A stretch of DNA of 64,000 bases from Phaeosaccion multiseriatum (lineage: Eukaryota > Protista > Ochrophyta, other classes), in contig OZ218961.1 of NCBI GenBank assembly GCA_965112735.1, positions 2,170,001 through 2,234,000 on the forward strand. Reading direction: 5' to 3'. The notes beneath the pieces are model-generated. The model did no database searches and had not been told where the DNA came from. It was given only the letters and a program-made list of their open reading frames with translations. Positions 1 through 9,352 of this stretch are shown piece by piece (position 1 is the first letter of the stretch; each line of letters opens with the position of its first letter). The translations under genes were made by a program, and so were the position numbers.

Positions 1-9
1 GCCAAGGAG

Positions 10-2775
10 ATGACAGAGTTTGTGGGGAAAATGAGGTGTTTGCAAGAAGGTGCTGCCGATTCGACCATTCGAGGCACTCTGCAAACGGCGCTACACGCAT
101 TGCAGGAAGAACTGTTTTGTATCTCGGAAGACTTCTTGGTTGGGAGCTGGTGGCGTAAGTTCCTGAATACCTCCACGCTCCAAGGGAACATTGACAAGCT
201 TGGAGGCGAGCTTCAATCGGCTTTGAGCAACTTCATGGCCTCTCAGGTGTTCGCCGCGGTAATGGACACGCAGCAACTCGTCACGGAGAACAATAACTTC
301 GTCAAGGAGAACAATGAAATGTTGCGACAGCGTCACCCCCAACGGCAGGAACGGGAGAAAGCGCCCATTCCGAAGCAGGCCCCACGTCTCAGCAACACGC
401 ACATCCCGAGGGCCGAAATGGAGGAGAGGACAGCACTAAGGCTGATTGAGATTGCGGAGATGGGAGAGCCGCTTCCGGACGAGCCGCTCCTCCCCGTGGT
501 GGTGTGCCATGGTGCGGGGGGGATGGGCAAGTCCGAGGCAGTGCGGGCCGTGATTGAGAGGGACGACGTCCGGAAGCAGTTCAAGAAGAACGGCATTCTG
601 TATCTGCGTGTGGGGAGGCTGCATCAAGAGGGGGCCGAAGAGGAGGGAAGCACCAAAGCTGACATGCTCCTGTCGCTGATGCAGACGCTCATGAACGACT
701 TTGGTCTGAATGTGGGGCTTGGGCTGCCGGACGAAGGGCCGCAACATATTCAGCACTTCCGGGAAGCTTCCGACTTTGCTTCTGCGATCGCCACACACGT
801 TCATAAGCACTCCTCGAGATGCTTGTGCGTTGCAGACGACGTGTGGGATGCCGACGTTCTGAGCATGCTCCGCAAGACGGGGCTTCAGCTGCTGGTCACG
901 ACGAGAGTCAAGGGGCTGCTCCCCTCAGAGGAGTCTGACTGCGTGGAGGTGAGGCGCATGGAGGAGAAAGCGTCGGTGCAGCTGCTGTTGAGGGACACAG
1001 CTGGCACTCGCGTTCCTGATGATGGTGAGGGGTTGTATAAGGCCATCTTGCTTGTTGCAGAGTGGTGCGGGAGGCACGCACTGGCGCTGTCAATGGCCGG
1101 GCGTCTCCCTCAAGTAGAGAGCAAGCCGGATGAGGAGCAAGCCTGGCTCGATTTGGCTCAGGACATCAAGAAAGGGCTCGGCGAGAACAGGGAGGGTAGT
1201 TCGATTGACAATATGAAGGCCGCGCTGGGCAGGGTTCTCACACTCAGCATCGACGCACTGCCTGACCCACTCAAAAGCCGTTATCTGTACCTGGCGGTCC
1301 TTCCAAGGGGCAGGGGAGCGAGCGAGCTCATGCTGAGGTCGTTGTGGGCCTATGACGAGCCTGCAGTAGCAGAAGCAGTGGCTCAGCTTGCGGATCGATC
1401 TCTGCTGGAGAGGTGGGGCCATGGCGGTGCGGTGCCTCACGAGCTGCAGCTGGACTTCATTGCCAATGCCATCAAGTCAGACATGCACAAGTGGGACTTG
1501 AAGACGGCTGTAGCGCGTCAGTCTGGCTTCTTGTCCCAGCAGGAGTGCATCGCTGGGAACGTGTGGGCCGACAGTGTTTCTAAGCAGGATGGCACGACTG
1601 GCGGTACAGAGTACGGCCTTGGTGGTGGATATGCGTATGTCGGGTACTGGCGCAGCACGTGGGAGCTCGCTCAGTCGTCGTCGGACATGGTGGTGGACGC
1701 GGTGATGAAGTCACTCGCGGAGGAAGAGTCTCACACAACGGGGGTGAGTAGAGCACGCCATTTGGAGTCGTGTGCTGAGTTATTTGCCATGGTAGTGAGA
1801 GGCGTGGAAGCGGAGGCGCTCTACCGCAAGGCCATGGCGATTAATGAGGAGGTGCTGCCTGCCAACCACCCGCACCTGGCCGGGTCGTACAATAGCCTCG
1901 GTAACCGTCTCCGCGATCAGGGCAAGGCGGAGGAGGCGGAGGTGCTGTACCGCAAGGCCATGGCGATTCGTGAGAAGGTGCTGCCTGCCAACCACCCGCA
2001 CCTGGCCAGGTCGTACAACAGCCTCGGTAGCCTCCTCAGCGATCAGGGCAAGGCGGAGGAGGCGGAGGCGCTCTGCCGCAAGGCCATGGCGATTTTTGAG
2101 GAGGTGCTGCCTGCCAACCACCCGCACCTGGCCATATCGTACAACAACCTCGGTTTATTCCTCTGGAAGCAGGGCAAGGCGGAGGAGGCGGAGGCGCTCT
2201 ACCGCAAGGCCATGGCGATTCGTGAGGAGGTGCTGCCTGCCAACCACCCGGACCTTGCCAGGTCGTACAACAGCCTCGGTAGCCTCCTCAGCGATCAGGG
2301 CAAGGCGGAGGAGGCGGAGGCGCTCTGCCGCAAGGCCATGGCGATTCGTGAGGAGGTGCTGCCTGCCAACCACCCGGACCTGGCCGCCTCGTACAACAAC
2401 CTCGGTAACCTTCTCAAGAAGCAGGGCAAGGCGGAGGAGGCGGAGGCGCTCTACCGCAAGGCCATGGCGATTTTTGAGGAGGTGCTGCCTGCCAACCACC
2501 CGCACCTGGCCATATCGTACAACAACCTCGGTTTATTCCTCTGGAAGCAGGGCAAGGCGGAGGAGGCGGAGGCGCTCTACCGCAAGGCCATGGCGATTCG
2601 TGAGGAGGTGCTGCCTGCCAACCACCCGGACCTGGCCATGTCGTACAACAACCTCGGTATCCTTCTCCGCGATCAGGGCAAGGCGGAGGAGGCGGAGGCG
2701 CTCAGCATGAAGGCCATGGCGATTCGTGACGGGGCGGTGTCTGCCAACCATCCGCACCGGGCCAGCGCGTATTAA
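10..2775 (+). CDS. NLR-like protein: MLKL/HeLo-like helical N-terminus + NB-ARC (STAND NTPase) + 7 x 42-aa TPR repeats; probably 5'-truncated by the window edge
   Basis: Walker A GAGGMGKS, Walker B CLCVADDVWD, LLVTTR, GLPL-like CGRHALALSMAG, MHD-like PHELQLDF. C-terminal TPRs with consensus AEEAEALYRKAMAIxEEVLPANHPxLAxSYNxLGxxLxxQGK. The frame is open back to base 1. Confidence 0.9.
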   Translation: MTEFVGKMRCLQEGAADSTIRGTLQTALHALQEELFCISEDFLVGSWWRKFLNTSTLQGNIDKLGGELQSALSNFMASQVFAAVMDTQQLVTENNNFVKENNEMLRQRHPQRQEREKAPIPKQAPRLSNTHIPRAEMEERTALRLIEIAEMGEPLPDEPLLPVVVCHGAGGMGKSEAVRAVIERDDVRKQFKKNGILYLRVGRLHQEGAEEEGSTKADMLLSLMQTLMNDFGLNVGLGLPDEGPQHIQHFREASDFASAIATHVHKHSSRCLCVADDVWDADVLSMLRKTGLQLLVTTRVKGLLPSEESDCVEVRRMEEKASVQLLLRDTAGTRVPDDGEGLYKAILLVAEWCGRHALALSMAGRLPQVESKPDEEQAWLDLAQDIKKGLGENREGSSIDNMKAALGRVLTLSIDALPDPLKSRYLYLAVLPRGRGASELMLRSLWAYDEPAVAEAVAQLADRSLLERWGHGGAVPHELQLDFIANAIKSDMHKWDLKTAVARQSGFLSQQECIAGNVWADSVSKQDGTTGGTEYGLGGGYAYVGYWRSTWELAQSSSDMVVDAVMKSLAEEESHTTGVSRARHLESCAELFAMVVRGVEAEALYRKAMAINEEVLPANHPHLAGSYNSLGNRLRDQGKAEEAEVLYRKAMAIREKVLPANHPHLARSYNSLGSLLSDQGKAEEAEALCRKAMAIFEEVLPANHPHLAISYNNLGLFLWKQGKAEEAEALYRKAMAIREEVLPANHPDLARSYNSLGSLLSDQGKAEEAEALCRKAMAIREEVLPANHPDLAASYNNLGNLLKKQGKAEEAEALYRKAMAIFEEVLPANHPHLAISYNNLGLFLWKQGKAEEAEALYRKAMAIREEVLPANHPDLAMSYNNLGILLRDQGKAEEAEALSMKAMAIRDGAVSANHPHRASAY
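1810..2772 (+). repeat. 126-bp coding tandem repeat (TPR array, 7 units + cap)
   Basis: Near-identical 126-nt units with variation confined to a few codons; units 3 and 6 share the same variable block, as do units 2 and 4. Confidence 0.95.
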
Positions 2776-2986
2776 GCGGAACCCTCTTGAGGCTCATCTT
2801 AAATGCAGGTGGGGTGAGGGGGGAGGGGAGGGTGCGTGACGTCATGTGTTGGTAATTGTCGGGTCGAGTAAAACTGAAGCAAAGTGAAGGTGTCGTCGAC
2901 AGAGCGGTCACACACACGCTCTCCGCTCCTGCTCTCTTTGACTCCCTCCCTCCCTCCCTCCCTTGTCTGTCACCTCCGACTCACAG

Positions 2987-5536
2987 GGCATCGTCGCGCA
3001 AGTGAGTCGCACCGGAGTGGTAGCCCCTGTGGCTCTACTTGAACCTCTCACAGTTGGCGGGTGGTGGTGAGCAAGGCCACCCTCCACAAGAGCAGCCAGA
3101 TGCAACGGTTGGGTCTACGTGAGGGTGACAGAGTCGTCGTCAGGCGGGTGATGACGTGATTTCTTATGTGGTGAGGGTTGTGTCGACTGAGGAGGAGCGC
3201 GAGGAGAGGAGCCAGACAGGTCAAGCCGGGGTCGATACTGGTGTCGATATCGATGTCGATGTTGATGGTGTCGACAATGCCTCGGTTTCCGAGTCGAGAG
3301 GTGCGCCCCTGAGGCTGCCCACGCACTGCCCTGCTTGCGGCACGGAACTGATACCAGGCAGTCAGGCCAGTCATATGGGCAGCACGGGGGGAGAGGAAGA
3401 CGAGGGTTTCCCAGTCGAGAAAGAGCAGCAGCAGCAACAGCAACAGCAGAAGGAGGGGGACGAGGACGATGACGACGACGACGAGGAGGAGGAGGAGGAG
3501 GAGGAGGAGGAGGCAGGCGGAGAAGTGGCCACCCGCTGTCCCGCGGGTCTGCGCTGCTCTGCCCAGGCTGTGCTGCGTCTGAGGCACTTTGTGAGCCGTG
3601 ATGGGATGGACATCAAGGGCATCGGAGGCAACAAACTGCAGGAGCTCTTTGACGCAGGCATCGTTACCAGCCCCGTCGACCTCTTCCGGCTGAGAGAGAC
3701 CACTGCTCTGCCACCACCACCGCCACTGCAAGAGGAAGTGGAGATGGAAGGGAAAGGGGAGGGGGAGGGAGAGGGGCGGAAATCCGCTCCCAAGAGCAAG
3801 GGGCGCAAGCGGGCACGGGTCAAGAAGGCGAGTGTGGTGTGTGTGTGTTTGTGCGTGTATGTGTGTGTGCGTGCGTGTGTGTGTGTCTGTGCGCACGCGT
3901 GTGTGTAAAGTGTGCGCGTGCCCCTCCCCTACCTCAACTAACCACCCCTACCCCCCTCCCCATCCACTGCCGTCTCCACCCCCCTCCTCCCCCTCCACAT
4001 CCATTGCCATCCCCTCCCGTCCACTGCCATCCACCCAGGCTCTGACAGGGGACGCCGCCCTCGCTGCCGCCATGCCCCCTTCGAGCTTGGCCGAGAGGGA
4101 CGGGTGGGGGCCGCTTTCAGCCTTCAACCTTCTCAGAGCTGTGGACAGGGCTCGCACAGAGGGTGAGTGGAGGGAGGAAGAGAGGGAGGGAAGAAGGGAG
4201 CGGGTGATTGAGTTATTGTGTGAATCAGTGAGTGAGTGAGTGAGTGAGTGATGAGTGAGTGAGTAGGTGAGTGAGTGAGTGAGTGAGTGAGTGAGTGAGT
4301 GAGTGAGTGAGTGAGTGAGTGAGTGAGTGAGTGAGTGAGTGAGTGAGTGAGTGAGGAGTGAGTGAGTGAGCAAGTATGAGTGAGTGTGTGTGTGAGTGAG
4401 TGAGTCACCGCCCCTCTGTCCCTCCCTCTCCCTCTCTCTCTCAATGCGTCTGCAGCGCTGGGGATCCGTCACTTCGGGGCCAAGACGGCACAGCTCACCG
4501 CCGAGGCCTACGGAGGAGACTTTGAGGAGTGGTGGAGAGAAGCCACAGCAGCGGCTGCAGCACTGGGCGATACAGCAGCAAGGGGTGGTGGTGCAGCAGG
4601 GACGAAAGAGGGCAGTAGTGAGGGGCGAGAGGAGCAGCAGAAGGAGGAGGGGAAGAGGGGACAGGCGGGGATAGACACAGCAGTTGGTGATTCAGCAGCA
4701 GCGGCGGCGCCGGTATCGCCAGAGTAGAGCAAGGTACTGGCCAGCGTGATCCCTGGGGTGGGGCCTGTGGCAGTTGGTTCTCTGGTGGAGTTTGCGAGCG
4801 ACGCTGCCAACTGTGAAGTGGTGGAGGGGTTGGCTCAGCACCTCACATTCGCCAATAATAGTGATGGGGGGGATGGGAGCAGTGGGAGGAGGGATGGAAG
4901 GGATGCAGAGGCGTATGGGCAGGGGCTGACGGGCGAGTGGCTGCGAGGCAAGGCCGTGGTGTTTACGGGCACACTGGAGAGGTAAGATTACGTAAGGCAG
5001 GGAGGGCGGTGCGGTATGAGGTGCGGTGGTACCATGTGGGGCTCGATATTGACATGAAGAAGCTCGATATTTTATTGAGATTGAGGAGGAAGCTCGATGT
5101 TGACATTGAGGAGGAATCTCGATTGTTCGAGAGAGAGAGGCTTCTGTATGCTTCTACTTGCGTGGCATACATGATACCGATCAACCAACCGACCCACCAC
5201 CCCGTTTGCTTCTCTCTGTGTGTCCGCTGTGTGTGCCGTGTGGTGCTGTCTCCTCCTATCTCCCTCTCTCTCTGCGTGTGTGTGTGTGCGTGCGTGTGTG
5301 TCTGTACGCCTCCTTCCCCTCCTCCTCGCCTCAGGATGCCCCGCGACGAAGCCAAGCGTCTCGCCGAGAGCTTTGGAGCGCGAGTGACGGGCGGAGTGAG
5401 TGGCAAGACTCAGCTCCTCGTGGTGGGCAGCAACCCTAGGGGAAAGCTCAAGAAGGCAGAGGAGCGGGGGGTGGAGTGCGTGAGTGAGGCGGAGTGGTTA
5501 CGGAGGCTGAGCTGGGAGGGGAAGGGGGAGGGGTAG
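2987..5536 (+). pseudogene. ligA: NAD-dependent DNA ligase C-terminal half (OB-fold, Zn finger, HhH, BRCT), intron-containing and disrupted
   Basis: [21 protein letters not shown] (OB fold); PTHCPACGTEL..RCPAGLRCSAQ (Zn finger); HFVSRDGMDIKGIG, GWGPLSAFNLL, ALGIRHFG, IPGVG (HhH); KAVVFTGTLER/MPRDEAKRLAESFGARVTGGVSGKTQLLVVG (BRCT). Two -1 frameshifts near 3060 and 3148, in-frame TAG at 4725-4727, no adenylation domain in the window. Confidence 0.88.
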
Positions 5537-6469
5537 AGGCGGGTGTACTTCCGTTGGTGATACAGCCTGCCAGTTGGTGGTACGTGGTACAGCCAGCGGC
5601 ACGCACTTGGCAGAGCGAGAGGTTCGGGGCGGTCGATGGAGGAAGGTAGGCAGAGGGGTGGGAGAGAGGGAGGGAGGAAGGAAGGCCGTGCCACAGGCCA
5701 ATCGCCGCCATAAGACTGGCTGGAGGGCACGTCCCTTGAAAACCCTTCGCGTACCGACCGAGTGCAGCATCGAGCCACCTCCCGGCACCGCGGCGCCGCG
5801 GCCTTCAAGTCATTGGCCCGCTGGCTTGCTGGGGCACTTTTGACATTGATGCTTCGTCTCCCCACCCCAAACAAACGACAAGCAGCGCTTCCCAGTCCCC
5901 CCCAGTGCTCGTAGCTCATACCGAGGGAGTCACTAAGCAAGGGATAGGCTGAGACGCAGAGTAATGTTGTAATGTGACGGGCACTTCTTTTGTGAGGCAG
6001 TCCACTGGAGCGCAGCCATGTGCAAAGGGTCAGGCAGGGCCACACACAGGCCCCCAGTGGCTTTTGCTACTTGGGCAAGGCATGCCTTTGAGCAGCCGAG
6101 CGGCGGTGGAGCATACAGCATGCGTGGCTGCTGTCAGAGAGTCAGAGAACCCCACGACAAGCTGAAAGCGCCGCGGCGGCCTGTTTCCTGTTTCTGGCCG
6201 GCCCGAGACGGCCTGTTTCGTGTTGCCAGAAGGTAGTAGGTGGACACTTCGAAACAGAGGTCGAGCTAGTCACATGGGCGTACAAAATAATAATAATAAT
6301 AATAAAATAATAACACCCCTTTCTCCAGAGCCAAAGCCAGCCTGGCAGCCAGCCTTGTCTCTATCAGCTTTATCCCCGAGCCATCCTATAAACGACCGAC
6401 CTGCTGGGAGGTGAGTGAGAAACGGCCACGCCCTCATCCCCATACCTGCCTTTCTGTCTTCCCTCTCAG

Positions 6470-9352
6470 GTGTTCGCGCCGGTAATGGAGAGGCAGCAAC
6501 TCGTCACGGAGAACAATGCCATGTTGCGACGGCGTCAACCCCAACGGCAGGAACGGGGGAAAGCGCCCATTCCGAAGCAAGCCCCACGTCTCAGCAGCAC
6601 GCACATCCCGAGGGCCGAAATGGAGGAGAGAACAGCACTAAGGCTCATTGAGATTGCGGAGATGGAGCAGCCGCTTCCGGAGGAGCCGCTCCTCCCCGTG
6701 GTGGTGTGTCATGGTGCGGGGGGGATGGGCAAGTCCGAGCTAGCGCGGGCCGTGATTCAGAGGGACGACGTCCGGAAGCAGTTCAAGAAGAACGGCATTC
6801 TGTATCTGCGTGTGGGGAGGCTGCATCAAGAGGCGGATGAAGAGGGGAAAGCTGACATGCTCCTGTCGCTGATGGACACGCTCTGGAGCGACTTTGATGC
6901 GAAAGTGGTGCTTGGGCCGCGACAAGATACTCAGCACTTCCGGGAAGCTTCCGACTTTGCTTCTGCGATCGCCACACACGTTCATAAGCACTCCTCGAGA
7001 TGCTTGTGCATTGCAGACGACGTGTGGGATGCCGACGTTCTGAGCATGCTCCGCAGGACGGGGCTTCAGCTGCTGGTCACGACGAGAGTCAAGGGGCTGG
7101 TCCCTTCAGAGCAAGGCGGGGGGGTGTTGGAGTCTGACTGCGTGGAGGTGGGGCGCATGGAGGAGAAAGCGTCGGTGCAGCTGCTGTTGAGGGACACAGC
7201 TGGCACTCGCGTTCCTAGTGTTGGTGAGGGGTTGTTTAGGGCCATCTTGCTTGTTGCAGAGTGGTGCGGGAGGCACGCACTGGCGCTGTCAATGGCCGGG
7301 TCGCTCCCTCAAGTAAAGAGCAAGCCGGATGAGGAGCAAGCCTGGCGCGGTTTGGCTGATGACATCAAGAAAGGGCTCGGCGAGAACAGGGAGGATAGAT
7401 CGATTGACAATATGAAGGCCGCGCTGGGCAGGGTTCTCACACTCAGCATCGACGCACTGCCTGACCCACTCAAAAGCCGTTATCTGTATCTGACGGTCCT
7501 TCCAAGGGGCAGGGGAGCGAGCGAGCTCATGCTGAGGTCGTTGTGGGCCTATGACGAGCCTGCAGTAGCAGAAGCAGTGGCTCAACTAGCGGATCGGTCT
7601 CTGCTGGAGAGGTGGGGCCATGGCGGTGCGGTGCCTCACGAGCTGCAGCTGGACTTCATGGCCAATACCATCAAGTTAGACAGGCACAAGTCGGACTTGA
7701 AGACGGCTGTAGAGCGCCAGTCTGGCTTCTTGTCCCAGCGGGACTGCATCATTGGGAACGTGTGGGCCGACAGTGATTCTGAACAGGATAGCACGGCTGG
7801 CGGCACAGAGTACGGCCTTGGTGGTGGATATGCGTATGTCGGGTACTGGCGCAGCACGTGGGAGCTCGCTCAGTCGTCGTCGGACATGGTGGTGGACGCG
7901 GTGATGAAGTCACTCGCGGAGGAAGAGTCTCACACAACGGGGGTGAGTAGAGCATGCCATTTGGAGTCATGTGCTGAGTTATTTGACATGGTAGTGAGAG
8001 GCGTGGAAGCGGAGGCGCTCTACCGCAAGGCCATGGCGATTAATGAGGAGGTGCTGCCTGCCAACCACCCGCACCTGGCCGGGTCGTACAATAGCCTCGG
8101 TAACCGTCTCCGCGATCAGGGCAAGGCGGAGGAGGCGGAGGTGCTGTACCGCAAGGCCATGGCGATTCGTGAGAAGGTGCTGCCTGCCAACCACCCAGAC
8201 CTGGCCATGTCGTACAACAACCTCGCTAACCTTCTCCGCGATCAGGGCAAGGCGGAGGAGGCGGAGGCGCTCTACCGCAAGACCATGGCGGTTCTTGAGG
8301 AGGTGCTGCCTGCCAACCACCCGGGCCTGGCCGTGTCGTACAACAACCTCGGCTTATTTCTCAGAAAGCAGGGCAAGGCGGAGGAGGCGGAGGCGCTCTA
8401 CCGCAAGGTCATGGCGATTGATGAGGAGGTGCTGCCTGCCAACCACCCGGACCTGGCCTCCTCGTACTACAACCTCGGCGTAGTTCTTACGGAGCAGGGC
8501 AAGGTGGAGGAGGCGGAGGCGCTCTACCGCAAGGCCATGACGATTCGTGAGGAGGTGCTGCCCGCCAACCACCCGAACCTGGCTATGTCGTACAACAACC
8601 TCGGTACCCTTCTCAGCGATCAGGGTGAGGCGGAGGAGGCGGAGGCGCTCTACCGCAAGGCCATGGCGATTCGTGAGGAGGTGCTGCCTGCCAACCACCC
8701 GGACCTGGTCATGTCGTACGACAACCTCGGTAACGCTCTCATTGATCAGGGCGAGGCGGAGGAGGCGGAGGCGCTCTACCGCAAGGCCATGGCGATTCGT
8801 GAGGAGGTGCTGCCTGCCAACCACCCGCACCTGGTCATGTCGTACGACAACCTCGGTAACACTCTCATCGATCAGGGTCAGGCGGAGGAGGCGGAGGCGC
8901 TCTACCGCAAGGCCATGGCGATTCGTGAGGAGGTGCTGCCTGCCAACCACCCGGACCTGGTCATGTCGTATGACAACCTCGGTAGCGCTCTCATCGATCA
9001 GGGCAAGGCGGAAGAGGCGGTGACGTCTTACCGCAAGGCCATGGAGATTCATCAGGAGGTGCTGCCTGCCAACCACCCGCACCTGGCCTTGACGTACAGC
9101 AACCTCGGATCCCTTCTCCACGATCAGGGCAAGGCGGAGGAGGCGGAGGGGCTCTACCGGAAGGCCGTGGCGATTAATGAGGAGGCGCTGCCTGCCAACC
9201 ACCCGGACCTGGCCTTGTCGTACAGCGCCCTCGGATCCCTTCTCAGCGATCAGGGCAAGGCGGAGGAGGCGGAGGCGCTCTACCGCAAGGCGATGGCGAT
9301 TCGTGACGGGGCGGTGTCTGCCAACCATCCGCACCGGACCAGCGCGTATTAA
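6470..9352 (+). CDS. NB-ARC-TPR NLR-like protein, paralog of 10..2775, lacking the N-terminal helical domain; 10 TPR units (first in-frame ATG at 6485)
   Basis: Same NB-ARC motifs and high identity to copy 1 from VFA onward; intact ORF; preceded by a pyrimidine tract ending in CAG at 6467-6469. Confidence 0.9.
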   Translation: MFAPVMERQQLVTENNAMLRRRQPQRQERGKAPIPKQAPRLSSTHIPRAEMEERTALRLIEIAEMEQPLPEEPLLPVVVCHGAGGMGKSELARAVIQRDDVRKQFKKNGILYLRVGRLHQEADEEGKADMLLSLMDTLWSDFDAKVVLGPRQDTQHFREASDFASAIATHVHKHSSRCLCIADDVWDADVLSMLRRTGLQLLVTTRVKGLVPSEQGGGVLESDCVEVGRMEEKASVQLLLRDTAGTRVPSVGEGLFRAILLVAEWCGRHALALSMAGSLPQVKSKPDEEQAWRGLADDIKKGLGENREDRSIDNMKAALGRVLTLSIDALPDPLKSRYLYLTVLPRGRGASELMLRSLWAYDEPAVAEAVAQLADRSLLERWGHGGAVPHELQLDFMANTIKLDRHKSDLKTAVERQSGFLSQRDCIIGNVWADSDSEQDSTAGGTEYGLGGGYAYVGYWRSTWELAQSSSDMVVDAVMKSLAEEESHTTGVSRACHLESCAELFDMVVRGVEAEALYRKAMAINEEVLPANHPHLAGSYNSLGNRLRDQGKAEEAEVLYRKAMAIREKVLPANHPDLAMSYNNLANLLRDQGKAEEAEALYRKTMAVLEEVLPANHPGLAVSYNNLGLFLRKQGKAEEAEALYRKVMAIDEEVLPANHPDLASSYYNLGVVLTEQGKVEEAEALYRKAMTIREEVLPANHPNLAMSYNNLGTLLSDQGEAEEAEALYRKAMAIREEVLPANHPDLVMSYDNLGNALIDQGEAEEAEALYRKAMAIREEVLPANHPHLVMSYDNLGNTLIDQGQAEEAEALYRKAMAIREEVLPANHPDLVMSYDNLGSALIDQGKAEEAVTSYRKAMEIHQEVLPANHPHLALTYSNLGSLLHDQGKAEEAEGLYRKAVAINEEALPANHPDLALSYSALGSLLSDQGKAEEAEALYRKAMAIRDGAVSANHPHRTSAY
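8009..9349 (+). repeat. 126-bp coding tandem repeat (TPR array, 10 units + cap)
   Basis: Same consensus as the first array with different variable residues; units 6-8 share LVMSYDNLGxxLIDQG. Confidence 0.95.

What the first reader, a model, noticed from the sequence alone, without database searches (positions are those of the whole stretch)
1810..9349. Intronless NLR TPR arrays with an invariant scaffold and hypervariable codons: a diversifying immune-type receptor locus
Seen: the 17 TPR units are almost identical at DNA level except for a fixed set of codons (AI-x-E, HP-x-L, LA-x-SY-xx-LG-xx-L-xx-QG), which vary radically (G/R/I/A/M/V/S/L; NRLRD, SLLSD, LFLWK, VVLTE, NALID). Unit number differs between paralogs (7 vs 10), unit 1 and the cap are shared, and identical variable blocks recur at non-adjacent positions (2=4, 3=6). 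Known: fungal NLRs with high-internal-conservation repeats and brown algal NB-ARC-TPR genes diversify their binding surfaces by repeat shuffling, the latter using one-repeat exons. Inference: shuffling here works by unequal crossing-over or conversion within a single exon, with positive selection on the TPR concave face.
Basis: partly seen in the sequence, partly recalled or inferred. Interest (0 to 1): 0.8.

Follow-up and report, generated by a model that had tools for sequence, protein, structure and literature searches.

The report
Algal NLR genes with hypervariable TPR arrays
Two neighbouring algal genes encode NLR-type switch proteins whose near-identical 42-residue repeats differ almost only at eight ligand-facing positions that evolve much faster than silent sites, a receptor-diversifying pattern known from fungi and seen here in a relative of brown-algal candidate immune receptors.

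Summary
Window 1801-2775 and 8000-9352 hold 7 and 10 in-frame 126-bp TPR units plus a shared 30-codon cap. Each array sits in one open frame with an NB-ARC domain.

With two paralogs about 165-175 kb upstream there are 48 full units. Variation is concentrated at codons 15, 25, 28, 31, 35, 36, 38 and 39, and at first and second codon positions. At these codons dN is 3-10 times the overall dS; the scaffold has omega about 0.7.

An ungapped alignment to kinesin light chain 1 puts 7 of the 8 codons on cargo-contacting positions of the concave groove (p about 1e-5). A second, unrelated array gene on contig C9 varies at nearly the same positions.

Array order is not collinear between paralogs. Duplicated blocks and mosaic units fit unequal crossing-over and gene conversion.

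The nearest relatives (29-38% identity) are brown-algal NB-ARC-TPR proteins. In two Choristocarpus relatives the repeats are split one per exon; here the arrays are uninterrupted.

Untested: immune function, expression and strain polymorphism. Gene B lacks the N-terminal domain, and "intronless" holds only for the NB-ARC-TPR body.

This is a new variant of a known kind. The scan had already described the upstream paralog pair.

The parts
1..2775 (+). Gene A. This is the part inside the window of a 1057-codon open frame that begins upstream at C12:2169602. Order: helical N-terminal domain, NB-ARC, linker, TPR array. Stop codon at 2773-2775.
493..1227 (+). NB-ARC domain of gene A, with a GAGGMGKS P-loop.
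   Evidence: Pfam PF00931 E 1e-9, 38.5 bits against a cut-off of 23.5
1801..2682 (+). TPR array A: 7 full 126-bp (42-codon) KLC-type TPR units. In each unit, codon k starts at unit start + 3(k-1). Hypervariable codons are k = 15, 25, 28, 31, 35, 36, 38, 39.
2683..2775 (+). Truncated 30-codon capping unit plus stop. All four paralogs share it and end in ...HPHR(A/T)SAY.
2776..6461 (.). 3' flank of gene A, which is also the spacer before gene B. It is 86-96% identical to the flanks after paralogs C and D and after the head-only fragment E, so the locus is a tandem array of one duplicated unit.
6304..6437 (.). Short dispersed high-copy repeat just upstream of gene B. Contig word depth here is 30-100 times that of its neighbours, and many contigs have loose ends at 6331 and 6388.
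6462..6470 (+). Point where homology of gene B to gene A begins (...ctcag|GTGTTCGC). No N-terminal domain was found in the 3.7 kb upstream, so B is 'headless'.
6470..9352 (+). Gene B: a 960-codon open frame with NB-ARC, linker and TPR array.
6668..7429 (+). NB-ARC domain of gene B.
   Evidence: Pfam PF00931 E 3e-11
8000..9259 (+). TPR array B: 10 full 126-bp units. It is the least homogenised of the four arrays (85% nt identity; 2.7 scaffold amino-acid deviations per unit against about 1 in the others).
9260..9352 (+). Capping unit of gene B plus stop.

Best explanation
These are NLR-type (STAND) receptor genes of the ochrophyte/brown-algal NB-ARC-TPR family. Their sensor is a superhelix of KLC-type 42-residue TPRs.

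Shown here:
- The repeat scaffold is kept uniform, while eight codons per repeat accumulate amino-acid changes several times faster than silent changes.
- By homology to solved KLC1-cargo complexes, those codons line the concave ligand-binding groove.
- Unit number and order differ between very similar paralogs.
- Near-identical units occur at non-adjacent places, and some units are mosaics of two others.

Inferred:
- Out-of-register recombination (unequal crossing-over) and gene conversion act within and between the single-exon arrays. They duplicate, delete and reshuffle 126-bp cassettes and homogenise the scaffold.
- Diversifying selection keeps or favours new residues at the binding positions. 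Each array therefore presents a different groove for a variable ligand, most plausibly from a pathogen or other non-self.
- Ligand binding would release the NB-ARC switch and activate the N-terminal helical domain. The fold and activity of that domain are unknown.
For: Architecture: NB-ARC passes the Pfam cut-off in both genes, and TPR_10/TPR_12 score E 1e-99 to 1e-134. The AF2 model of array B is a TPR superhelix (pLDDT 87.5) matching OGT and KLC.

Selection:
- Per-codon counts on 48 units are.
- The tree-based count gives hv dN/global dS of 3-10 and scaffold omega of 0.7.
- Pairwise pN(hv) is 0.40 against pS(scaffold) 0.069.
- At hv codons, mean minor-base counts are 15 and 14 at codon positions 1 and 2 against 5 at position 3. 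In the scaffold they are about 1 at all three positions.
- There are 44 distinct 8-residue signatures among 48 units.

Binding face:
- Unit position 27 equals TPR_1 profile position 1 in both proteins. The hv codons are therefore TPR positions 33, 2, 5, 9, 10, 12 and 13. Positions 2, 5, 9, 12, 13, 33 and 34 are the concave-face set of Magliery and Regan.
- The alignment to KLC1 is ungapped. The published KLC1 cargo contacts are R266, N259, N301/302, V305, K309, Y313, R327, K340, N343/344, L347, L348, N351 and N386. They fall on unit positions 1, 15, 28, 31, 32, 35, 36, 38 and 39. Overlap with the hv set is 7 of 8, hypergeometric p 1e-5.

Replication: an unrelated high-identity NB-ARC-TPR gene on C9 varies at positions 1, 15, 16, 28, 31, 32, 38 and 39.

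Shuffling:
- Arrays have 7, 10, 16 and 15 units.
- Paralogs C and D are 97.3% identical outside the array, yet their arrays are not collinear.
- Duplicated blocks: D8=D10, D9~D11, A3~A6 and the run C7-C10.
- Mosaic units: A4, C15 and B3.
- Paralog identity in the NB-ARC is mosaic, and A and B share a 210-bp identical tract across unit 1.

Functional constraint: all four frames (961-1592 codons) are open. Under neutrality at 2.5% divergence per lineage, P(no stop) is 0.01-0.07 for each gene.

Family: the nearest relatives are brown-algal NB-ARC-TPR proteins.
Against: - No RNA evidence and no second strain were available.
- The N-terminal domain could not be assigned: Pfam gives nothing, the AF2 model has pLDDT 46, and a language-model search gives only a weak lead to MLKL_N.
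- Gene B has no N-terminal domain and a less homogenised array, so it may be decaying.
- dN/dS across the NB-ARC and linker between paralogs is 0.7-1.2. That is also what relaxed young duplicates show.
- Trees of 126-bp recombining units are unreliable. Homogenisation erases silent differences, so omega is inflated to an unknown degree.
- The concave-face mapping rests on homology. The model's coordinates could not be read.
- Repeat arrays this uniform are prone to assembly error.
Confidence: 0.75

Rival explanations
1. These are young tandem duplicates drifting neutrally. On this reading the eight codons are simply unconstrained surface positions, and the uniform scaffold reflects recent duplication rather than selection.
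For: Non-repeat dN/dS between paralogs is 0.7-1.2. Gene B is headless with a noisier scaffold. Fragment E and the frameshifted C9 gene show decay within the family.
Against: Neutral sites cannot exceed the silent rate, yet hv dN is 3-10 times dS and the changes avoid third codon positions. All four long frames are open against neutral expectation. The same positions vary in an independent gene.
Confidence: 0.07
2. It is a real diversifying receptor, but not for pathogens. It could serve conspecific non-self or mating recognition, or be a KLC/NPHP3-like cargo or scaffold adaptor with variable partners.
For: TPR_NPHP3 and KLC are the best TPR matches. Several fungal NLRs with highly uniform repeats act in allorecognition. 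No effector domain could be identified.
Against: NPHP3 and KLC are conserved proteins without uniform arrays or copy-number turnover. NB-ARC plus variable repeats is the NLR architecture, and the closest relatives are the brown-algal candidate immune receptors. The data do not separate pathogen sensing from allorecognition.
Confidence: 0.13
3. Array lengths and unit order are partly assembly artefacts, because near-identical repeats can be collapsed or mis-ordered.
For: Short-read contigs break into 60-500-bp pieces across the arrays, and many fit two places. The literature notes that such repeat arrays are hard to assemble (PMC12222747, title and abstract).
Against: The genome is in 22 contigs, which suggests long reads. 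All arrays are exactly in frame with 0% indels. The hv pattern is a per-unit property that does not depend on unit order.
Confidence: 0.1

Closest known systems
Fungal NLRs with high-internal-conservation (HIC) repeats, e.g. Podospora anserina NB-ARC/TPR genes such as Pa_2_10340 and the HNWD het-d/e/r genes (Dyrka 2014, PMC4986451; Ament-Velasquez and Saupe 2026, PMC13449251)
   Same: - STAND NTPase followed by near-identical 42-residue TPRs in one exon.
- Variable repeat number.
- Repeat exchange between paralogs.
- A few hypervariable positions under positive selection on the concave face.
- Clustering with transposable-element-like and duplicated DNA.
   Different: A different lineage: the NB-ARC here groups with brown-algal proteins, not fungal ones. 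Eight selected positions were found here against three reported for the Podospora TPR locus. No repeat-induced point mutation is known here, and allelic polymorphism has not been shown.
[quoted passage not shown]
   Same: These are the closest sequence relatives of the NB-ARC and linker (29-38% identity; Sphacelaria, Nemacystus, Choristocarpus, Ectocarpus, Cladosiphon). They share the KLC-type 42-residue TPRs, gene clustering and birth-and-death turnover.
   Different: In two Choristocarpus relatives each repeat mapped by tblastn is a separate exon of about 126-132 nt, and shuffling there is described as exon shuffling. Here each array is one uninterrupted frame. Positive selection on the Ectocarpus TPR exons was weak; here it is strong and site-specific.
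Kinesin light chain TPR domain (KLC1/KLC2; PDB 7AI4, 6FUZ, 3ZFW)
   Same: Same repeat type and register, with an ungapped alignment (E 6.5e-54). The cargo-contact positions coincide with the hypervariable codons.
   Different: KLC has six diverged, conserved repeats, no NTPase and no copy-number variation.
Bacterial and archaeal NLR-like proteins with highly uniform repeats (Daskalov 2020; survey in PMC13449251)
   Same: Near-identical repeats are associated with the NLR architecture.
   Different: They are prokaryotic, mostly carry WD40 or TPR repeats with other NTPase subtypes, and were not compared by sequence here.

Membership tests
NLR / STAND receptor architecture | Central NB-ARC or NACHT NTPase with a P-loop | tested here: met
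   PF00931 scores 38.5 and 43.3 bits against a cut-off of 23.5, and a GAGGMGKS P-loop is present.
NLR / STAND receptor architecture | C-terminal superstructure-forming repeat domain | tested here: met
   7 and 10 TPR_10/TPR_12 units. The AF2 model is a superhelix with pLDDT 87.5.
NLR / STAND receptor architecture | N-terminal effector or signalling domain | tested here: inconclusive
   Gene A has a helical domain of about 220 residues with no Pfam hit. The AF2 model has pLDDT 46, and the only lead is an atlas match to MLKL_N at 0.89. Gene B lacks the domain.
NLR / STAND receptor architecture | Role in immunity or non-self recognition | not testable with these tools
   No expression or phenotype data; no RNA run was found.
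High-internal-conservation (HIC) repeat NLRs (Dyrka 2014 criterion) | About 85% or more identity between repeats over at least 100 residues | tested here: met
   Identity to each array's consensus is A 88%, C 88.5%, D 88%, F 91% and B 84% (borderline). Nucleotide identity is 85-93%.
High-internal-conservation (HIC) repeat NLRs (Dyrka 2014 criterion) | Variation in repeat number | tested here: inconclusive
   Shown between paralogs (7, 10, 16 and 15 units). Variation between alleles or strains could not be tested.
High-internal-conservation (HIC) repeat NLRs (Dyrka 2014 criterion) | A few hypervariable positions under positive selection on the binding surface | tested here: met
   Replicated in gene F.
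Brown-algal NB-ARC-TPR family (Zambounis 2012) | Sequence kinship of the NB-ARC module | tested here: met
   The best hits in 1.84 billion representative proteins, apart from one multi-NB-ARC protein, are brown-algal proteins at 30-38% identity with E 7e-36 to 5e-18. No closer relative was found.
Brown-algal NB-ARC-TPR family (Zambounis 2012) | One TPR repeat per exon (exon-shuffling substrate) | tested here: not met
   The arrays here are uninterrupted frames. In Choristocarpus relatives the mapped repeats are separate 129-135-nt pieces with introns between them.
KLC-type 42-residue TPR (Pfam TPR_10/TPR_12) | 42-residue period and an in-register match to KLC repeats | tested here: met
   TPR_10 E 2e-99 and 1e-134. 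Ungapped alignment to KLC1.

The most novel reading that the evidence does not exclude
The locus may work as a cassette system. On this reading the headless gene B, the head-only fragment E and stray unit fragments are not mere debris. They would be donors whose 126-bp units are copied by gene conversion into the complete genes A, C and D. Array turnover would then be fast enough, mitotically or between clonal lineages, to give this alga a rapidly changing receptor repertoire without needing the exon-per-repeat structure of brown algae.
Probability: 0.1. Interest if true: 0.75.

Novelty: new variant of a known kind. Interest (0 to 1): 0.5.

Why it matters
Repeat-shuffling receptors are a recurring way to generate recognition diversity. 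Examples are fungal NLRs with near-identical repeats, lamprey VLRs and brown-algal exon shuffling.

This locus is unusually clean. It belongs by sequence to the brown-algal NB-ARC-TPR family but uses the fungal-style single-exon organisation. The same receptor family therefore seems to reach diversification by two different gene structures.

It offers three practical things:
- a compact set of four genes and 48 units in which the specificity-determining positions can be read directly;
- a prediction of which residues to mutate or swap in binding tests;
- a simple assay for testing receptor turnover in an alga, namely the length of an array amplicon.

Tried and rejected
- Word-based protein searches with residues 1-730 of A and 40-420 of B found nothing. 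Only the exhaustive HMMER search found distant relatives.
- Public reads: five runs from two studies, all kept as short contigs. They cross-map between paralogs and cannot show array length, strain differences or transcription.
- N-terminal domain: Pfam gives nothing, and a four-sequence AF2 model reached pLDDT 46. No fold search was run on it.
- The 3D model's coordinates cannot be read in scripts. Side-chain orientation was therefore inferred from homology and helix phase, not measured.
- A targeted mutator of the diversity-generating-retroelement type is unlikely. The consensus hv codons (CGT, GAC, ATG, AAC, ACC, CTT, AGC, GAT) are not adenine-rich AAY codons, and substitutions involve all bases. 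No reverse transcriptase or template repeat was searched for.
- CpG decay explains only a minority of the changes at codons 15 and 25.
- Other TPR_10-type loci tested (C9:3534490, C14:51636) have no 126-bp tandem arrays. In the TPR_10 scan (a lower bound), the long uniform arrays all belong to the NB-ARC genes.
- PAML and HyPhy were not available, so formal site models were replaced by my own parsimony count.
Full report
WHAT IS THERE

The window is G000:C12:2170001-2234000 of a 67-Mb, 22-contig eukaryotic assembly with about 59% G+C.

Tandem Repeats Finder reports two 126-bp arrays with no indels: 1806-2765 (7.6 copies, 88% matches) and 8005-9335 (10.6 copies, 87%). Each lies at the end of a long open frame.

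Gene A is a 1057-codon frame that starts upstream of the window at C12:2169602 and stops at window 2775. Gene B is a 960-codon frame at 6470-9352.

Pfam gives NB-ARC above its cut-off in both genes. It also gives TPR_10, TPR_12 and TPR_NPHP3 with E-values from 1e-61 to 1e-134. In frame, gene A has 7 full 42-residue units plus a 30-residue cap (1801-2775). Gene B has 10 units plus the cap (8000-9352).

THE FAMILY IN THIS GENOME

The genome holds two more full paralogs on the same contig, 165-175 kb upstream:
- C: 16 units plus cap, 1591-codon frame.
- D: 15 units plus cap, 1528-codon frame.

A head-only fragment E lies 5 kb upstream of gene A. An earlier agent of this scan had already described the C/D pair as a tandem NB-ARC-TPR receptor pair.

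E, A and B form a tandem series of one duplicated unit. The 3' flank of A matches the DNA that follows E and C at 88-89%, and the first 345-530 bp after D and B at 96% and 86%. E carries the N-terminal domain and P-loop and then jumps to the 3' flank. B starts exactly where the N-terminal domain ends, with homology beginning at 6462-6470, and no head is detectable in the 3.7 kb upstream.

THE HYPERVARIABLE CODONS

Across the 48 full units, eight codons carry almost all amino-acid diversity. These are codons 15, 25, 28, 31, 35, 36, 38 and 39, with 6 to 11 residues each and pN of 0.26-0.51. Codons 8 and 32 are weaker. All other codons have pN below 0.12.

At the eight codons, the mean minor-base count is 15 and 14 at codon positions 1 and 2 but 5 at position 3. 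In the scaffold it is about 1 at all three positions.

A parsimony count on a FastTree of the units gave the following:
- Hypervariable codons: 151 non-synonymous against 10 synonymous changes.
- dN over the global dS: 3.2 to 10 per codon, Poisson p from 1e-17 to 4e-4. Seven of the eight codons pass a 42-fold Bonferroni correction. The eighth passes on the tree built without the hv codons.
- Pooled binomial of N against S: 1e-5.
- Scaffold omega: about 0.7.

Pairwise, pN at the hv codons is 0.40. Scaffold pS is 0.069, which is about the dS between the paralogs' non-repeat parts (0.026-0.065). There are 44 different eight-residue signatures among the 48 units.

Two caveats apply. Trees of recombining 126-bp units are crude. 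Homogenisation removes silent differences, so the size of omega is uncertain, but its direction and its restriction to these sites are not.

WHERE THE CODONS SIT

The AF2 model of array B (pLDDT 87.5) is a regular TPR superhelix. Its helices cover unit positions 2-18 and 24-39, and it matches the OGT and KLC TPR domains.

In both proteins, Pfam TPR_1 position 1 aligns to unit position 27. The hv codons are therefore canonical TPR positions 33, 2, 5, 9, 10, 12 and 13, plus one position near the end of helix B. Magliery and Regan found positions 2, 5, 9, 12, 13, 33 and 34 to be the most variable TPR positions, all exposed on the concave face. HOP uses positions 2, 5, 6, 9, 12 and 13 to bind its ligands.

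The units also align without gaps to KLC1 (E 6.5e-54). The KLC1 residues published as contacting Y-acidic cargo are R266, N259, N301/302, V305, K309, Y313, R327, K340, N343/344, L347, L348, N351 and N386. They fall on unit positions 38, 31, 31/32, 35, 39, 1, 15, 28, 31/32, 35, 36, 39 and 32. I anchored the numbering on the paired asparagines (NN) of the repeats, and every residue identity fits the aligned KLC1 sequence.

Seven of the eight hv codons are on this contact set of nine positions (hypergeometric p 1e-5). This includes helix-B position 15, which corresponds to KLC1 R327. I could not read the model's coordinates, so this mapping is by homology, not a measurement.

AN INDEPENDENT REPLICATE

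A distant paralog on contig C9 (gene F, 36% identity in the NB-ARC) carries its own array of 11 units plus a truncated twelfth. The units are 126 bp, share 92.6% nucleotide identity, and have a different consensus. Its variable positions are 1, 15, 16, 28, 31, 32, 38 and 39, with pN 0.34 against an overall pS of 0.055. Seven of these eight are again KLC1 contact positions.

A genome-wide TPR_10 scan finds long uniform arrays only in these NB-ARC genes. Two other TPR loci I tested have no 126-bp tandem arrays.

EVIDENCE FOR SHUFFLING

- Paralogs C and D are 97.3% identical over the 1446 bp before the array, yet their arrays are not collinear. The best C-D unit pairs differ by 5-8 nt and lie off the diagonal.
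- Near-identical units sit at non-adjacent places. D8 equals D10 and D9 is close to D11, which is a two-unit duplication. A3 is close to A6. C3 and C7-C10 differ from one another by 1-3 nt.
- Several units are best explained as mosaics of two others. A4 matches A7 on the left and A2 on the right with 1 mismatch, against 5 for the best single parent. C15 and B3 behave likewise.
- A and B share a 210-bp identical tract that covers unit 1 and the first half of unit 2, although they are 94% identical elsewhere. Paralog identity along the NB-ARC is mosaic.
- Flanks are more diverged (86-89% identity) than coding silent sites (dS 0.05-0.065). This fits homogenisation of the coding part, but only loosely.

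These are the footprints expected of unequal crossing-over and gene conversion. The events themselves were not observed.

ARE THE GENES ALIVE?

All four frames are open over 961-1592 codons. With 3.5-3.8% of substitutions creating stops and 2.5% divergence per lineage, the chance of no stop is 0.01-0.07 per gene under neutrality. This argues for selection on the open frames.

Against this, dN/dS in the NB-ARC and linker is 0.7-1.2. B is headless with a noisier scaffold. F has a frameshift. No RNA run was found, and the public runs are short contigs from essentially one sample, which cannot show array length or strain variation.

The N-terminal domain of about 220 residues remains unassigned.

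RELATIVES AND WHAT IS KNOWN

Word-based searches found nothing. The exhaustive search found 696 relatives, none closer than 29-38% identity. The first hit (E 7e-37) is a 2827-residue protein with seven NB-ARC copies, which I did not look up. Eight of the next nine were looked up, and all are brown-algal proteins, from Sphacelaria, Nemacystus, Choristocarpus, Ectocarpus and Cladosiphon. This supports, without proving, the scan's earlier view that the genome is a stramenopile alga.

That is the NB-ARC-TPR family in which Zambounis et al. described exon-per-repeat shuffling and only weak positive selection on TPR exons. I checked two Choristocarpus genes. The TPR repeats that tblastn maps are separate pieces of 129-135 nt, 42-45 residues each, with introns between them.

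Internal identity of the repeats in three relatives is 81% (Nemacystus P0005), 64% and 57%.

Highly uniform TPR repeats with hypervariable concave-face positions, repeat-number polymorphism and inter-paralog exchange are established for fungal NLRs. A 2026 survey reports such NLRs in all domains of life. It pools non-animal, non-plant eukaryotes and does not mention stramenopiles.

VERDICT

The kind of system is known. What is new is the combination of brown-algal family membership with single-exon arrays of near-identical repeats, and an unusually sharp, replicated selection signature. Immune function, expression and population-level turnover remain to be shown.

Noticed in passing
L043 (G000:C9:1884001-1894000), minus strand, about C9:1889600-1892748: A second NB-ARC-TPR gene (F) with its own array of near-identical units. 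In unit 12 the frame shifts: compared with the other units there are four extra bases after ...GTTGCGGCG, giving a stop a few codons later. Three more intact-looking units and a different C-terminal end continue in the +1 frame. This is either a truncating mutation or an assembly error.
   Followed up: partly
L036:2669-7441 (-) and L035:4002-8585 (-), between the N-terminal domain and the NB-ARC: A 14-residue (42-bp) repeat of the type METKQIVTESKDTA occurs in several tandem copies in paralogs C and D (more in C than in D). Genes A, B and fragment E have only one or two. This is a second length-variable repeat in the same genes.
   Followed up: no
L037:4536-5699 (+), i.e. C12:2164536-2165699, about 5 kb upstream of gene A: A head-only gene fragment E. 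It has the N-terminal domain and P-loop, then the frame leaves the family sequence. From L037:5639 the DNA matches the 3' flank of gene A, so the NB-ARC remainder and the TPR body have been deleted. Together with headless B, this looks like the product of recombination between tandem copies.
   Followed up: partly
window 6304-6437: A short dispersed repeat with 30-100 times the contig depth of its surroundings, directly upstream of the point where gene B's homology to gene A begins.
   Followed up: no
G000:C2:4469523-4469725 (L028, L034): Two adjacent fragments of the C12-type TPR unit (59 bp at 92% and 141 bp at 87% identity) in opposite orientation on another contig, with no array around them.
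   Followed up: no
window 2659-2754 and 9236-9328 (last full unit into the cap): The C-terminal cap region matches Pfam DUF7273 (E 3e-19 and 2e-20, profile positions 21-52 of 65). The cap may therefore be a recognisable conserved ending of such TPR arrays.
   Followed up: no
L036, minus strand, about L036:1249-2361, downstream of paralog C: An open frame with motifs reminiscent of NAD-dependent (bacterial-type) DNA ligase (for example ...RAGDVIPQVV...), interrupted by low-complexity inserts. Not checked against any family library.
   Followed up: no
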